A stretch of 56,947 nt of DNA, filler included, from Platydemus manokwari (Eukaryota), in NCBI GenBank assembly GCA_037951405.1. It is 5 parts of 5 records of this genome, joined end to end, with 100 filler letters (N's around TTAATTAATTAA, not from the genome) between each part and the next. Parts side by side here need not be neighbours in the genome. Positions count along the whole stretch, not along the records: positions 35,970 to 48,030 come from JBBMOY010322225.1; 4 more parts are not named here. The stretch is one strand, 5' to 3'. The translations under genes and the position numbers were made by a program. Positions 38,310-46,249 of this stretch are shown one piece after another (the stretch's first letter is position 1; every line of letters begins with the position of its first letter). The notes under the pieces were generated by a model. It was not told the DNA's origin. It saw only the letters and a list, made by a program, of their open reading frames with translations, and made no database searches.

Positions 38310-39060
38310 TAAAGCACTCTTCCTGGAATTATGATGCACAATCAGGACATACACATCAATGTAGGCCTAACTCGCATACAAATCAACCAAGTGAGACGAA
38401 GGCAATAGAAATCACCGTAAAATATGCCTAAACACACAACAATTCCACTTATCTTATTTTGAATCAAATCCCAATGGATCCGATATCCCAAATAGATCAT
38501 GGAACAATACTGTGGACCCGGCCAAAACAATTACCATCAGCATTGACAGCAATAAATGCAAACATGGAGCACTTAAAAAACCTATCATACAAATAATTGG
38601 TCCTAGAACCCCAATCTCAAAATGTGCAAATGACACAGACAATGGTTTGCTGTACGATATACGGACATTACAAAATCCCGCATTGACATGGAAATCAGGT
38701 TATGTACCAAAGGTCCATGATACACCAGTTCTATCATGGGACTATTTTGAGGACGCAAAGTGAAATAATGAATTGGTCAATAGCCGTAGAAAACAACAGT
38801 ACCAATATGCCGTCACTATTCGGAATCTCACGAGAGAAAAATTCAATGCTGTCCTCAGAAACACAGATCGTTACTGAGATTCATAACAATTCCGCGCCAA
38901 CAGTTAAGTTAGAATTCCAAATAACGAGCAATGCTATGCTGAATTCGAGGATATTACTGCACTGAACGTCAATGACGATGAGAAAGAGAGATTCTGATCC
39001 TACTACACTGGGATTCTGCGAGTTTCGACCACCAACAGCAACTCTAGAATATCTGTGGTG
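38310..39060 (+). mobile_element. Decayed viral/retroelement envelope glycoprotein-like fragment
   Basis: A higher-GC island with broken frames: DHGTILW, KCKHG, PISKC, and VRIPNNEQCYAEF...NVN...F...YTGIL, resembling the CY-E...F...T-IL block of class III (gB/chuvirus-type) env proteins in LTR elements. Confidence 0.35.
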
Positions 39061-39353: not shown

Positions 39354-42300
39354 ATGGTCTGATATTTTTTAAATTATCAATTTTTAAATATCATCTTTGA
39401 AATTTTTTCAATGGTTTCTTTTACATATATTTTAGAGAGAAGTCATTTGCATAAATATTGGTCAGGCTGGTGTTCAGATGTCGAATGCTGCTTGGGAATT
39501 ATTTTGTGTCGAGCATGGAATTGAAGCAAACGGAAAGTTAAAATTAAACTTAGTTGATGACGATAGCACTGCATTTAAAACATTTTTTGAAGAATTGCCA
39601 GATAAAAATCAATTTGTTCCCAGAACTATTTCAGTAGATTTGGAACCAACAGTACTTGGTATTTTGGATCTATTTTTTGCTTTGCCTTTAATGATTTGGT
39701 TTTATTTAATCACATATTTTTTTGTTCTAATATATTCATACAAGGTTCTTCTTGAATAATTACATTAATACAGAATTTCATTAAAATATCAATAATGTAG
39801 ACTCTCTAAGGTCTAACAAATTATTTTTTTCTGATTTTTTAAATGTGGTAATGTTCGTATTTTAATTCGAATGATTGTGAGTTCTTAATTTCGCAACAAA
39901 AATTATTATTGTTATTATTCTTCAATTTTCACACCGTTAGTTACTTAGTTATTTATAAATTTAACAGAATGACGCTAACGCAAAATCTCTAAATAAGTGG
40001 ATCATTTTGTACTGCTTAGTTGACTTAATTTTTTGAAGTAATTGCAACTAATCAATCGAAAAAAATGAGAATTTCTTGATTCCACATAAAGTTAAATAAT
40101 AACAAACCGGATTTTTAACTAAAAATCTCTGGCCCCAACTTTTAACATAAATAAATTAAAATTTTTAAAAGATTGTTTAAGCTTTAAAATTTTAACTAAA
40201 TACAAACATATGAGTAGCTTCAAGAGATGTCTTGAAAATTATTTTATTTACCATTTCTAGATGATTCTATTAGATATTGTATAAAATATAGAACAGTAAA
40301 ATTGTTCTACAACAACTTGAAATTAATGATATTTATAATTTTAATTATTAAGAGTTTAGAAAACTTAATATTGATATATTATGTTTGGTGTAATTCATTT
40401 TTAAACTAAGCATTATAATACTTGAATATATTTTCAGAGAAAATTTGGTGTTCGGTGATCAGTTTCATCAATTACATTTTAGGTTTTGGGGTTTTTTAAA
40501 ATATGGATTCTTATAATCCCTCAAAAACCATTCGTTATTATGAATTATTTATCGATAATTTAAGTTGGCTATTTTTGCATCAATTTTTTGTAATTTTTAA
40601 CTTAATATATAAAGCTCATCAAAATTTATTTGTTTTTAAATTTTAAAATTTAAACTAGTGTTTCAATAGTTTGCATAATGATAGAAATGTTGGTATTATT
40701 TTAACAGATAATCAAAAGATGAATTTAAACAACTCTGTAATTTACTGTTAAGCTTTGTTATGTTATCTTTGAGAATCTTTATTTTACATTATGATAGGGC
40801 AACTAAAAATTCACAATTCCAAGAAGATTCGTTTTGATAAACTTTAATTGATGAAGAACGAAACAACTTGTTGAACATAAAATAAGTCATGATAAAATAT
40901 GCGATCATCGCTTAGGTGGGAAGCCGCTAAATTCATAACATGTACGTAAAAAAGCAAGAATGACCGATAAATAATGATCAAACAATAATCGATATTTCAA
41001 ATTTACTAATATTGGTTTAAATTTTCGCAAAGTTAGTTTGAAAATTTAAATGAGTTGATTGAATTTCATCAAAGAACAAGCGTCATAACTGTTATTATTT
41101 TTATGTTTTCGCCTCAATTGCCATTTATAATGGAGTTTTCATGTCATTGCACGTCTTCACCATGTTTTTCTACTGTATTTTTATGAGAGTTAATTGTTGT
41201 TTGTTGAGAATTTGTTAGTTTATTGTATTGTTTATTAAATAAAATTCAAATTCTTACAACGTCTATTATATCAAAACCAAAATTGATATTCTTAAATTTG
41301 TTAATTGGTAAATGTTTATATATCACGAATTGTTAATTATAATTTTAGAGAAATTAAGTTTTTCGGTTGGGTTCAATTCTCAATAAATATTTAAGTTCAT
41401 CTAAATGATGTAAAAGTCTGATGGGGATATTTCTTTTGGGGAATCAGTTGTACCATTTTTTTTGAAAAATACCGATTTTTGAATCATCATTCATATTATA
41501 ATGTTTATATAATTTTAAAAAGCTATTTTCTCAAAACTTGACATTTTTCACTGTTATCCATACGGACCTAACTATGACGTAATCGAGTCTTATCACAGTT
41601 TTTATATCAATAACTACCTCAGTCAATCCAGGTTTAAATGTTGGAATGAATGATTATATATATAATGTAAAATTGAAAACCCGTTTTGAAAATCCTTCGC
41701 CATACACTGCGTATTTAAATTAATTAATTACATTAATTACATTTAAATTAATTACATTGATTTTAATTTTTTATGTGGGTATAGAATAATATTTTGTATA
41801 ACATTTTTAAAAACTTATTTAAAATTGTTTGAATATAAAATTCGGTATTACTAAATTTAACAATTTTTGTTAATATTTTATATTAATTGTTAGCCGCTAT
41901 TATTTTAAAAGACACATTAAAAAATAACTGAAAAGCCAAGACACCAAAAATAAATTTATAATTTATTACAAATATTTATAAAAGTAAATTTGCGTAAATA
42001 TGATTTCATATAAAATCAGAATTAAATTTGAATTATAAATTTAATTAATTTAAAATAATTAAAATTAATTAAATACTATTATAGATGAAATTCGAAAAGG
42101 ACCTTACCGTTGTCTTTTCCACCCAGATCATTTAATATCGGCTCTCGAAGACGGAGCTAACAATTTTGCAAGAGGATTATTTACAATAGGAAAAACTAAA
42201 TTACCGATAGTGAGAGAAGTTTTACGAAAAGCTGTCGAAAATTGTGACATGCTTCAAGGGTTTTTTATGTTGCATAGTTGTGGTGGAGGTACGGGATCCG

Positions 42301-43316
42301 GGTTTTCTACCTTAATGTTAGAAAATTTATCTCTCGATTATGCTAAAAGAACTAAATTTCAAATGCATACATTTCTTAGCCCAATTATGTGCAGTTCTGT
42401 TGTCGAACCCTACAACACCATCTTATCTTGTTCGAAATCCATGGCAAGTAGTGAAATGACTAATGTAATGGACAATGAAGCGATGTATGAAATTTGCAAC
42501 ATCAATCTCGAAATACCCAGGCCGACGTTTTCCCATTTAAATCGTTTAATTGCTAGATTATTTAGTGATTTAACGGTTTCTCTTAGATTTGAAAGTTCTT
42601 TAAACTCAGATCTTGATCAATTATGTACAAATCTAATTCCATTTCCAAGAATTCACTATCCGATATCATCGTATTCTCCGGTTAATTCTCAAAACCGAGC
42701 AGTGCATGAGCTATGGACCACAAGTCAGTTGACAAGAGACGTATTTGAATCTACCAATCGAATGGCCACATGTGATCCAGGTAAAGCTCGGTATATGTGT
42801 TGCGTACTGCAATACAGAGGTGATGTATCCCATCAAGAAATAAATGCTGCTATTATGGAAATAAAAAAACGGAGAGATGTACGATTTGTTTCTTGGTCCC
42901 CTACGGGTTTTAAAATAGGAGTAAACTGTCAACCACCTGCTACAATTTCCGGAATAATCGCTCCTAGTACAAGATCTACGACAATGTTATCTAATACAAC
43001 TGCTGCCAAAGATTGTTTTGGTGAATGTGAAAAGAAATTCGATTTATTATTTTCTAAAAGATCTTTTGTTCATTGGTATGTAGGCGAAGGTATGGAAGAA
43101 GGAGAATTTAACGAAGCTAGAGATGAAATCGATTCTTTAGTCAAAGATTATGAAGAAATTGAATTAGCAGAAATAGAATTGGACGAAGAAGAAGAATTAC
43201 TTGATGAAGCAAATGAAGATGCTGCTAAAGCGGGTGGTCAAAATGATGACCAAACGGGTATCAATGGAGAAATTGACGAAAACCCAAAAGAATCTAGTCC
43301 ACCCCCAGAAGATTGA
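39354..43316 (+). CDS. Divergent alpha-tubulin, 485 aa; exons 39354-39356 (ATG only, position uncertain), 39436-39658, 42085-43316
   Basis: M|[14 protein letters not shown]...VDLEPTVL|[14 protein letters not shown]...GGGTGSG...[15 protein letters not shown]. Introns fall after codon 1 and at c.226 (phase 1, D76), the positions known from vertebrate alpha-tubulin genes. There are no internal stops. Confidence 0.95.
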
Positions 43317-43949
43317 TTAATAGTCTATCTAATAAAAATATTTCTTTATTCAACGCTGTTGAAAGAGAGAATTATTAGCATTTTAATCTGAAAATATTTT
43401 GTTTAAGACAAATAATTCATGTCTAATATTTGTTTATAAAAACATTAAATGATAATTTTGGCAATTAGAAGAAAATAAATCATTTTATACTTTACAATTC
43501 TTCGATTTTTTTATTAAAATAGTGATATACGTAAATTTTACTAGAATATTTCTAATTTATGATAATTTTAATGATTGTCAGTTTAACTTAATCGTTCGTT
43601 AGATAATTTATTTAATTTTAATTTCACTTAATTATGCTTATACTATAAGTCTGAATAAATTATTTGAATAGCTCACAATGATTTTGATATTTATAAATAA
43701 TTATTCTACAATGATTGTTAGATCATTTTTAAAAATATTGCTACATTTATAATCTATAAGCTAAAACTATAATCACCACTTTCTGATCTTAAAGAATAAA
43801 CACTTTAAGAATAGGAATGGTTACCCTAAGGAGGATCACACAAAAGTTGATGATCATGAAAACTGCCAATCGTTCACATTAGTCGCTCTATTTGCACGTT
43901 GAGTTGTGTTTGTTTCCACTGTATTTAATAACTTTACTTTTATTTTGTA

Positions 43950-45030: not shown

Positions 45031-45930
45031 CATCGTTATATTTCTTATTTATCGAGTAGTCACTAATTTCCAGGTCGTTAGCACTTGTAATTCCTGAAGA
45101 TAAAGCGATCCACGAGGTTTGTGTAGGTTGAGTAGGCCGGTAGCTTTAATAGAGACACGTGATGTTCTTCAAGCTAAAGTCGAATTAACTGTGCTGCATG
45201 AGGTCTGGCAATGTCATGCTGAATGACCATTTCCAAAGCAGATAGTCTTGTTTGAAAGTTTAAAATCAAATTCTGAAGGAATTGTAGGTATCTCTCAGCG
45301 TTCATGGATCCATCGTCGTGAAGAATTTCGAAATTTTGCATAGTTGCCAGCCAACAATAATCAAAAATTTGCAATCAGATATTGTCGGCCTAGCAAAAGT
45401 TAGACGATCACCTGTGCCATTCACACAAACACTGTTGCATTCTTTTGAAGATACGTCTCGTAGGTAAATTCATTTTTCATCGATCACAATCATCTTTTCT
45501 TTAGCCCTTCTTGCCGAATAAACATTCAACATTTATCGACAGAAAATGATTCTGATTCTCTTTTTATTATCCCTTGGAATGTGGGGAACCTATCCGCTGC
45601 AAAGTTCTTGTTTCAATATGTGGCATATAGTCATTTCTTTAATATCAGTGAAAAAAAGTGACAGCTTCAGTGGCAATTTTCTTTAATAATGATACGCACA
45701 ATAATGAAATTCTCTTCTGCAGTGCTCGATCTTAGTCTTCCTGAACTTTCTTTTCGCTCAAAAAGTGTTCGTTCGTCTCCTACAAACTCTTTTGATAATC
45801 TCCTGCACTCTCCGAAGGCTGAAGACGTTCTCTGCTCCACAACTTTCGACAAGAAAGGGATGGATTTTGGTAGCCTAAAAGCTGTTCCGTTTTAAAGTTG
45901 CAACAAAGAAATTTATGTCGCATTGCTTTG
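45030..45930 (-). mobile_element. Tc1/mariner transposase remnant
   Basis: HTH region ending SGRLRS, IVIDEK (first catalytic D, cf. GDEKW), SMNAERYLQFL, HDIARPH (cf. HDNARPH) and a decayed PYS-x-L motif near 45130. TIRs were not recognised. Confidence 0.85.
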
Positions 45931-46249
45931 CCTTCATCTTTCAGGCTAAATCGTATAGGCAACTCTAATCGATTGATTTAGATTTAAATTTTTTAAGCTA
46001 AATCATTTAACCAACTCTTATCGATTTCTTTAAATTTAAATCTTGAACTTTCCAGTCTTGTTAATGATCTACCTTAGAAAATTTACCTAAGAAAGATCTA
46101 CTTAGAAAATTTTAAATTTGACCTTCAGATATTTGACATTTCGTATAGATTGACTCTGAAGTCGGTATTATTGATTACACAATTTGCAATGATATTGATT
46201 ATTTGATTGTGGCTAAATAATACATGTGAGTTCGACGTCTTGGACATAG

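What the first reader, a model, noticed from the sequence alone, without database searches (positions are those of the whole stretch)
42591..42632. Alpha-tubulin with the GTPase-activating Glu254 naturally replaced by Gln
Seen: the spliced protein is in register with canonical numbering here ([14 protein letters not shown] versus DGALNVDLTEFQTN), and codon 254 is CAA (42618-42620) with Asp at 253. Established: alpha-E254 completes the beta-tubulin GTPase site, and engineered substitutions block or slow hydrolysis and stabilise microtubules. Inference: an isotype for hyperstable microtubules or a lattice modulator, unless D253 compensates. The ORF is otherwise intact.
Basis: partly seen in the sequence, partly recalled or inferred. 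Interest (0 to 1): 0.72.

Follow-up and report, generated by a model that had tools for sequence, protein, structure and literature searches.

The report
Flatworm-type alpha-tubulin lacking catalytic glutamate
This is an intact, selectively maintained alpha-tubulin gene whose GTPase-activating glutamate (E254) is replaced by glutamine, and the same replacement is shared by a family of divergent alpha-tubulins that includes planarian and fluke proteins, so it probably builds unusually stable microtubules.

Summary
Codon 254, in register with canonical numbering, is CAA (42618-42620, Gln). Asp is at 253 and D251 is kept.

It is not a one-off or a base error. The closest relative, P0001 (81% identical), has the same D-Q-L. 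So do about 20 divergent alpha-tubulins, including Schmidtea polychroa Q7Z1L8 and a Fasciolopsis buski protein. All canonical alpha-tubulins examined keep E254 (288 of the 352 proteins mapped; the rest are the divergent ones and 13 beta-tubulins).

In a careful tree built without the T7-loop columns, 21 sequences lacking E254 form one clade (100/99).

The gene is under constraint:
- The GTP-binding residues of alpha's own nucleotide site are kept.
- 107 of 131 canonically invariant positions are kept.
- Neutral-drift simulations almost never stay stop-free.
- Paralogues show pN 0.16 against saturated pS.

Changes cluster in the T7 loop/H8 (246, 250, 254-256), and position 254 is consistently Q (16 of 20).

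Engineered human alpha-E254Q is hydrolysis-deficient and gives stable, catastrophe-free GTP microtubules (PMC11893814). The best reading is therefore a naturally GTPase-dead alpha isotype for stable microtubules. That step is inferred, not shown.

Natural alpha isotypes without E254 are already described in Apicomplexa (PMC10056924), so the principle is not new.

The parts
39354..39356 (+). Candidate initiator ATG, the coding part of a mini exon 1. It is followed by GT (39357-39358), which would give a 79-nt intron. This is inferred only. The alternative source of Met1 is a trans-spliced leader ending in AUG.
   Evidence: Sequence. An in-frame TAG at 39433-39435 forbids extending exon 2 upstream. 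Paralogue contig L002 shows the same architecture unambiguously: ATG, a GTAAGA donor, a 53-nt intron, then codon 2. Flatworm spliced leaders end in AUG (PMC12582326).
39436..39658 (+). Exon 2, encoding residues 2-75 ([14 protein letters not shown]...DLEPTVL) plus the first base of codon 76. The acceptor AG is at 39434-39435 and the donor GT at 39659-39660.
   Evidence: Pfam Tubulin, E 2.9e-6 for the exon alone. It differs from P0001 at 3 of 74 residues by direct comparison of the translation with the P0001 sequence. L001 has a near-identical exon start after 'ttttag'.
39659..42084 (+). Intron 2, 2,426 nt, phase 1, inside codon D76. It is very AT-rich (about 23% G+C).
   Evidence: The same intron position and phase occur in paralogue contigs L001 and L002, where the introns are about 47-65 nt.
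42085..43316 (+). Exon 3, encoding residues 76-485 and the TGA stop (43314-43316).
   Evidence: open frame. Pfam Tubulin E 5.1e-29 and Tubulin_C E 2.5e-35; best solved relatives are alpha-tubulins, E about 1e-130, residues 77-446.
42591..42632 (+). T7 loop and start of helix H8 (residues 245-258), reading [14 protein letters not shown] where canonical alpha-tubulin reads DGALNVDLTEFQTN.
   Evidence: Positions 246, 250, 254, 255 and 256 are among the ten least-retained of 131 canonically invariant columns.
42618..42620 (+). Codon 254, CAA = Gln, in place of the catalytic Glu.
   Evidence: Position 254 is Q in 16 of 20 clade members and E in none.
43179..43313 (+). Extended acidic C-terminal tail (residues about 441-485). 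It has no terminal Tyr or EEY motif.
   Evidence: Long, poorly conserved acidic tails are shared by the clade.
43331..43336 (+). AATAAA polyadenylation-signal-like hexamer, 15 nt after the stop codon.
   Evidence: Sequence. This is a consensus match only, in AT-rich DNA.

Best explanation
The piece carries a functional three-exon gene for a divergent alpha-tubulin isotype. It belongs to a multi-paralogue family found in flatworms, with a planarian and a fluke member named. In this family the T7-loop/H8 'GTPase-activating' element has been remodelled and the catalytic Glu254 is fixed as Gln. The protein keeps the residues that bind its own non-exchangeable GTP, and it keeps N249, D251 and K352. 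It should therefore still fold, pair with a beta-tubulin and enter the lattice. When it sits on top of a beta subunit, it cannot supply the carboxylate that activates hydrolysis of that beta subunit's GTP. Lattice built from it, or containing it, would then stay GTP-like, resist catastrophe and be long-lived. The long acidic tail without a terminal Tyr, and the absence of K40, would additionally remove it from the usual tyrosination and acetylation codes. Shown here: gene structure, register, Q254, clade conservation, and purifying selection. Inferred: loss of GAP activity (from the engineered human E254Q), microtubule stabilisation, and the cellular site. Stable arrays such as flatworm sperm cortical microtubules or 9+'1' axonemes are candidates but are unsupported by data here.
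For: - Q254 is in register.
- Alpha-tubulin identity: Pfam Tubulin and Tubulin_C, best solved relatives are alpha chains at E about 1e-130, and the gene nests inside alpha relative to a beta outgroup.
- Residues of alpha's own GTP site are kept: G10, Q11, A12, D69, E71, D98, N101, S140, G143-G146, E183, N206 and N228. Y224 is F.
- Q254 is shared with P0001 (81% identical), the S. polychroa protein P0103, the F. buski protein P0353 and others.
- The 21 sequences lacking E254 form one clade at 100/99 with the T7 columns excluded.
- Constraint: 107 of 131 canonically invariant columns are kept. Position 254 is one of five columns where no clade member keeps the canonical residue, and the only one of the five with a dominant replacement, Q in 16 of 20. 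Paralogues show pN 0.158 against pS 0.854. Neutral simulations rarely stay open: 1.9% at 90% identity and 0% at 81%.
- A paralogue exists as a spliced full-length transcript-like contig (L003).
- Human alpha-E254Q is hydrolysis-deficient, stable, free of catastrophes, and binds EB3 along the whole lattice (PMC11893814).
Against: - There is no biochemical or expression evidence for this gene.
- D251 is retained and an acidic residue sits at 253, so some residual or alternative catalysis cannot be excluded.
- The effect of E254Q was measured in a human alpha-1B background about 50% identical to this protein.
- The partner beta-tubulin and the cell type are unknown.
- Clustering of fast-evolving sequences could be partly long-branch attraction, although support is high under a site-heterogeneous model.
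Confidence: 0.6

Rival explanations
1. The protein is a normally dynamic alpha-tubulin isotype. GAP activity would be retained because D251 together with the new Asp253, or a repositioned water network, substitutes for Glu254. Its specialisation would then lie in the divergent tail and loops rather than in GTP hydrolysis.
For: D251 is kept and D253 is present in the window, in P0001 and in 12 of the 20 Q254 sequences. Toxoplasma alpha3 also has an acidic residue shifted to 253 next to a non-acidic 254 (PMC10056924), which hints at a recurrent pattern.
Against: D253 is not conserved. It is S in P0103 and P0226, T in P0080 and P0258, I in P0205 and P0353, and M in P0232. D251 is N in P0103. The human E254Q mutant, which keeps D251, is hydrolysis-deficient. 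Adjacent residues at a helix start point in different directions (general structural knowledge, not modelled here).
Confidence: 0.2
2. The protein is a non-lattice or sub-stoichiometric regulator. It would not build whole microtubules. It would be incorporated sparsely to create GTP-like islands that promote rescue, or act at ends or templates (for example basal bodies or nucleation), or work outside microtubules altogether.
For: Small fractions of E254Q tubulin already change the properties of mosaic lattices. The family has many paralogues with very different tails, which suggests specialised roles. Lateral-contact loops, including the H1-S2 loop, are divergent.
Against: Longitudinal-interface residues and those of alpha's own GTP site are retained. 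Constraint is strong across the whole globular body, as expected for a lattice subunit. Nothing here is specific to this reading.
Confidence: 0.15
3. The feature is a pseudogene, an assembly error or a sequencing error at a single base (GAA read as CAA).
For: The initiator ATG is not contiguous with exon 2. No RNA run and no read-level check were obtained.
Against: The same Q occurs in the 81%-identical P0001 and throughout the clade. The open frame runs 409 codons in 23%-G+C surroundings, P about 2.5e-17 by chance. Neutral simulations lose the frame. Splice sites and intron positions are conserved with paralogues. An ATG-only first exon is demonstrated in paralogue L002.
Confidence: 0.03

Closest known systems
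Canonical animal alpha-tubulin (for example alpha-1B, PDB 3j8x and many others)
   Same: Same two Pfam domains and a gap-free alignment over residues 77-446 at about 50-52% identity. The GGGTGSG signature and the residues of alpha's own GTP site are present, as are N249, D251 and K352. A loop corresponding to the alpha-specific S9-S10 insert is present, one residue shorter. The N-terminus reads (M)REV.
   Different: E254 is Q, T253 is D, F255 is L, G246 is S and V250 is S. There is no K40 and no C-terminal Tyr. The tail is about 45 residues long and acidic, giving 485 instead of about 451 residues.
Schmidtea polychroa alpha-tubulin Q7Z1L8 / AAP47197.1 (P0103, 489 aa). From memory, not verifiable in the held library, this was published in 2003 as a 'divergent alpha-tubulin' of this planarian.
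   Same: Same clade in the tree, with Q254, the ESS motif at 245-247, LQYRG, and a long C-terminal extension. It is 54% identical to exon 3.
   Different: It belongs to a different paralogue group within the clade. It has N at 251 and S at 253, so both carboxylates near 254 are gone.
Engineered human alpha-E254Q tubulin (PMC11893814)
   Same: The identical substitution at the identical position of the T7/H8 element.
   Different: It is a laboratory point mutant in an otherwise canonical alpha-1B. The natural protein carries about 48% further differences, including neighbours 253, 255 and 256. The biochemical phenotype (no hydrolysis, stable GTP lattice, EB3 along the lattice) is measured only for the human mutant.
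Toxoplasma gondii alpha3-tubulin and coccidian homologues (PMC10056924)
   Same: These are natural alpha isotypes lacking the canonical D251 and E254 (T and Q/H). They have unusually long C-terminal tails and were proposed to have little or no GAP activity and to stabilise polymers.
   Different: They come from a different eukaryotic supergroup and were not included in my tree, so the resemblance is presumably convergent. They also lose D251 and have an insert in the MREI motif. The window protein keeps D251.
Beta-tubulin Lys254, at the equivalent T7/H8 position facing alpha's own GTP site
   Same: The principle is the same: a non-acidic residue at this position facing a nucleotide leaves that GTP unhydrolysed (established knowledge). 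K was seen at this column in all 13 beta-tubulins mapped.
   Different: This is a different subunit and interface (intradimer), with K rather than Q.

Membership tests
Alpha-tubulin (tubulin superfamily) | Tubulin/FtsZ GTPase domain plus tubulin C-terminal domain | tested here: met
   Pfam PF00091 (E 5.1e-29 for exon 3, 2.9e-6 for exon 2) and PF03953 (E 2.5e-35).
Alpha-tubulin (tubulin superfamily) | Closer to alpha than to beta or other tubulins | tested here: met
   All best solved relatives are alpha chains at E about 1e-130. The gene nests within alpha relative to a beta outgroup at 100/100.
Alpha-tubulin (tubulin superfamily) | Glycine-rich GGGTGSG signature and the residues of alpha's own GTP site | tested here: met
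   G10, Q11, A12, D69, E71, D98, N101, S140, G143-G146, E183, N206 and N228 are present. Y224 is F.
Alpha-tubulin (tubulin superfamily) | Catalytic Glu254, with D251, in the T7 loop/H8 that activates beta-tubulin GTP hydrolysis | tested here: not met
   Position 254 is Gln (CAA 42618-42620). D251 is present. E is invariant in all canonical alphas examined.
Alpha-tubulin (tubulin superfamily) | Sites of the usual modification code: Lys40 (acetylation) and a C-terminal Tyr (tyrosination cycle) | tested here: not met
   No Lys aligns at position 40. The tail ends ...SSPPPED.
Alpha-tubulin (tubulin superfamily) | Forms heterodimers with beta-tubulin and polymerises | not testable with these tools
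   Needs biochemistry. The only indirect support is retention of interface residues.
Divergent Q254 alpha-tubulin clade (S. polychroa Q7Z1L8, F. buski KAA0189647.1, P0001 and others) | Groups with these sequences in a tree built without the T7-loop columns | tested here: met
   The clade of 21 has 100/99 support. Window plus P0001 has 100/99, adding P0080 97/84, and adding P0036 99/93.
Divergent Q254 alpha-tubulin clade (S. polychroa Q7Z1L8, F. buski KAA0189647.1, P0001 and others) | Shared derived residues: Q254, S246, L/I255, F108, and a long acidic tail without terminal Tyr | tested here: met
Divergent Q254 alpha-tubulin clade (S. polychroa Q7Z1L8, F. buski KAA0189647.1, P0001 and others) | Shared gene structure: an ATG-only first coding exon and a phase-1 intron in codon 76 | tested here: inconclusive
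   The phase-1 intron at D76 is shared with L001 and L002. The ATG mini-exon is clear in L002. In the window it is only a candidate (39354-39356) and it is not seen in L001.
Hydrolysis-deficient alpha-tubulin (functional class defined by E254A/N/Q mutants) | No polymerisation-stimulated GTP hydrolysis, GTP retained in the lattice, no catastrophes | not testable with these tools
   Only the sequence determinant (Q254) is met. The phenotype is known for human E254Q.

The most novel reading that the evidence does not exclude
An animal phylum (flatworms) maintains, under purifying selection, a whole radiation of alpha-tubulin paralogues that are naturally GTPase-dead. E254 is fixed as Q, with occasional H, D, V, S or A. 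These paralogues would build permanently GTP-state, non-dynamic microtubule arrays, for example the sperm cortical microtubules and 9+'1' axonemes typical of the group. They would be natural counterparts of the engineered E254Q 'GTP-cap mimic' lattices.
Probability: 0.4. Interest if true: 0.8.

Novelty: new variant of a known kind. Interest (0 to 1): 0.62.

Why it matters
GTP hydrolysis triggered by alpha-E254 is the basis of microtubule dynamic instability, and this glutamate is invariant in ordinary alpha-tubulins.

A conserved, selected animal family with Q at this site would be a natural experiment on what cells do with a lattice that cannot hydrolyse GTP:
- It offers native material for studying GTP-state lattices, EB and MAP recognition, and motor behaviour.
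- It could explain how flatworms build very stable sperm or cortical arrays.
- Because parasitic flukes share the family, it could mark tubulin isotypes with unusual drug responses.

The finding also shows that loss of the GAP glutamate has happened more than once, since it is also reported in Apicomplexa.

Tried and rejected
Those places were sent to no search tool afterwards.
- A word search with a profile of the clade was swamped by tandem-fused canonical alpha-tubulins and gave no new members.
- A region-restricted word search recovered P0001 and P0036 again and added three further members (P0178, P0183 and P0205, identified).
- The 70-row careful tree did not finish in two runs. A 35-row careful tree was used instead. 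The rows left out were mostly very long-branched D, S or N variants and extra canonical sequences.
- dN/dS for the window gene itself could not be computed, because no DNA is on record for P0001. The P0074/P0030 paralogue pair was used instead, and its synonymous sites are saturated.
- The organism could not be named. UniParc-only and Logan records carry no taxon.
- The 2003 paper on the S. polychroa protein and the planarian CCT paper are not in the library. The testis expression that I recall for the S. polychroa gene is therefore unverified and is not used as evidence.
- Pfam on seven neighbouring ORFs gave nothing.
The exons were analysed separately by reference, and structure prediction was therefore not run.
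- The pseudogene, base-error and 'other tubulin family' readings were considered and rejected on the evidence given under rival explanations.

Full report
**1. Observation**

The stretch 42591-42632 reads [14 protein letters not shown] on the + strand. GAT at 42615-42617 is Asp and CAA at 42618-42620 is Gln.

The register with canonical numbering follows from the gene model.
- Exon 2 starts at 39436, straight after a 'ttttag' acceptor. It encodes R2[13 protein letters not shown]... down to L75, plus the first base of codon 76.
- Exon 3 starts at 42085 after 'tatag', completes D76, and runs open to the TGA at 43314-43316.
- Hence codon 254 = 42087 + 3 x 177 = 42618.
- HMMER aligns exon 3 without gaps in this region to solved alpha-tubulins, residues 77-446, at E about 1e-130. 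It pairs D-Q-L with T-E-F at 253-255.

**2. What the gene is**

Pfam finds Tubulin and Tubulin_C in exon 3 and the N-terminal part of Tubulin in exon 2. Exons 2 and 3 are each about 52% identical to a canonical alpha-tubulin.

Residues kept:
- The residues that hold alpha's own non-exchangeable GTP: G10, Q11, A12, D69, E71, D98, N101, S140, G143-G146, E183, N206 and N228. Y224 is F.
- N249, D251 and K352.

Features missing:
- Lys40.
- The C-terminal Tyr.

The tail is about 45 residues long and acidic and ends ...SSPPPED.

*The initiator Met.* An in-frame TAG at 39433-39435 prevents exon 2 from extending upstream, so Met1 must be supplied separately. There are two possibilities.
- A candidate ATG followed by GT lies at 39354-39358, which would give a 79-nt intron.
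- A trans-spliced leader could donate the AUG. All reported parasitic-flatworm spliced leaders end in AUG (PMC12582326).

The paralogue contig L002 shows the ATG-only first coding exon unambiguously: ATG, a GTAAGA donor, a 53-nt intron, then codon 2. L001 and L002 also share the phase-1 intron inside codon 76. An AATAAA hexamer lies 15 nt after the stop.

**3. Not a one-off**

The word search returned one close relative and several at 51-57% identity.
- P0001 (UniParc only, 500 aa) is 78-81% identical over exon 3 and differs at 3 of 74 residues in exon 2.
- P0030, P0036, P0074, P0080 and P0085 come from Logan contigs, and P0060 from UniParc.
- P0103 is Schmidtea polychroa Q7Z1L8.

All of these have Q at 254, in the patterns D-Q-L, D-Q-I, S-Q-I or T-Q-L. 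Every canonical alpha-tubulin among the proteins has E-F-Q-T-N at 254-258.

The exhaustive profile search of 50%-identity representatives was followed by residue mapping. Of 352 proteins:
- 288 have E.
- 20 have Q.
- 15 have D.
- 13 have K, and these are beta-tubulins.
- A few have V, S, A, H and other residues.

One Q-bearing cluster contains Fasciolopsis buski KAA0189647.1. Five Q254 paralogues come from a single sample. Q254 is therefore a family trait that spans at least a planarian and a fluke, and it occurs in several paralogues per genome.

**4. Phylogeny**

The careful tree used 35 rows under LG+C20+F+G4 PMSF, with the T7-loop columns removed and beta-tubulin as outgroup.
- All 21 sequences lacking E254 form one clade with 100/99 support and a stem length of 0.30. 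They are separate from canonical alpha-tubulins, including those of Macrostomum, Schistocephalus and Opisthorchis.
- Within the clade, the window pairs with P0001 (100/99). P0080 joins next (97/84), then P0036 (99/93).
- Long-branch attraction cannot be fully excluded, but the site-heterogeneous model and the shared intron positions argue for common descent.
- A Steinernema protein with E-Q-L (P0081) sits among the canonical sequences. It is a separate case or an annotation artefact.

**5. Selection**

- Exon 3 is a 409-codon open frame in DNA whose introns are 23% G+C. The chance probability is 2.5e-17.
- In simulations of neutral substitution at intron composition, 1.9% of replicates were still stop-free at 90% amino-acid identity. 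None were at 81%, the observed identity to P0001.
- Between paralogues P0074 and P0030, the 370 core codons give pN 0.158 against pS 0.854, which is saturated.
- Of 131 columns invariant in 16 canonical alpha-tubulins, the window keeps 107. The clade's median retention is 0.86.
- No clade member retains the canonical residue in only five of those columns: 113, 250, 254, 308 and 370.
- Five of the ten least-retained columns lie in 246-256, so the change is concentrated on the GAP element.
- Position 254 is the only one of the five with a dominant replacement, Q in 16 of 20. This looks like selection for Q rather than simple relaxation.
- D253 is present in only 12 of the 20 Q254 sequences, and D251 is N in the S. 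polychroa protein. This weakens the idea that D253 is a replacement catalytic residue.

**6. Mechanism**

[quoted passage not shown] Human alpha-E254Q tubulin is hydrolysis-deficient. It forms stable microtubules without catastrophes and binds EB3 along the whole lattice. It also gives a slightly expanded lattice (PMC11893814).

By inference, this natural Q254 alpha cannot activate hydrolysis in the beta subunit beneath it. It would then yield GTP-like, long-lived lattice, either as whole arrays or as stabilising islands.

Flatworm sperm carry parallel cortical microtubules and 9+'1' axonemes (for example PMC4178227 and PMC4230190, abstracts). These are plausible destinations, but nothing here links the gene to them. 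I recall that the S. polychroa gene was reported as germline-expressed, but I could not verify this and do not rely on it.

A transcript-like, intronless, full-length contig exists for paralogue P0357. At least one family member is therefore probably expressed.

**7. Comparison with what is known, and novelty**

The engineered substitution is well studied.

Natural alpha isotypes without E254 have been described by sequence analysis in Toxoplasma alpha3 and coccidian homologues. These have T at 251 and Q or H at 254, again with very long tails, and a stabilising role was proposed for them (PMC10056924). The principle is therefore known.

I found nothing in the held literature that mentions position 254 of planarian or flatworm tubulins. 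The S. polychroa sequence has long been public, but the clade-wide fixation of Q254 under selection does not appear to have been pointed out. That is absence within this library only.

I rate the finding a new variant of a known kind.

**8. Limits and procedure notes**

- No RNA run holds the stretch.
The exons were handled separately by reference, so no structure model was made.
- The source organism could not be named. A flatworm origin is inferred from the nearest named relatives.

Noticed in passing
window 39433-39436 and 39354-39358; L002 200-262; L001 100-135: Exon 2 begins exactly at codon 2, right after an AG acceptor, with an in-frame TAG just upstream. Met1 must therefore come from an ATG-only mini-exon, which is clear in paralogue L002, or from a trans-spliced leader ending in AUG, as flatworm leaders do. 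L001, in the window's own subclade, shows no ATG followed by GT within about 130 nt upstream.
   Followed up: partly
window 39659-42084: The phase-1 intron in codon 76 is 2.4 kb here, against about 47-65 nt in the paralogue contigs L001 and L002 from another organism. It is about 23% G+C and contains short AT-rich repeats built on 'aattaatta'-like motifs.
   Followed up: no
window 45174-45962 (- strand): Several short ORFs lie in a stretch of raised G+C (0.37). One contains a D-I-A-R-P-H-like motif reminiscent of Tc1/mariner transposase C-termini. Pfam found nothing at E <= 0.01, so at best this is a decayed remnant.
   Followed up: partly
window 38342-38965: An island of raised G+C (0.40) and strong AT skew carries overlapping short ORFs on both strands just upstream of the tubulin gene. 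Pfam gave no hit.
   Followed up: partly
P0081 (Steinernema glaseri A0A1I8A5P0), P0082 (Ceratobasidium), P0180 (Lygus hesperus): Three otherwise canonical-looking alpha-tubulin records outside the clade also lack E254 (E-Q-L, N-K-F and S-D-F). They may be real isolated variants or chimeric or low-quality gene models.
   Followed up: no
Representatives: P0239, P0242, P0245, P0249, P0250, P0252, P0319: A sister sub-clade of divergent alpha-like tubulins has V, S, T or A at 254. Three of its members (P0239, P0245 and P0249) were in the careful tree, where they group at 100/97. Several of its members, and several in the Q sub-clade, carry UniParc numbers close to that of P0001. This suggests that one AT-rich genome holds ten or more such paralogues.
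   Followed up: partly
Columns 113, 308, 370 and 96 of the alpha-tubulin alignment: Besides the T7/H8 element, E113, R308, V370 and K96 are invariant in canonical alpha-tubulins but are lost by all or nearly all clade members. Their structural roles were not examined.
   Followed up: no
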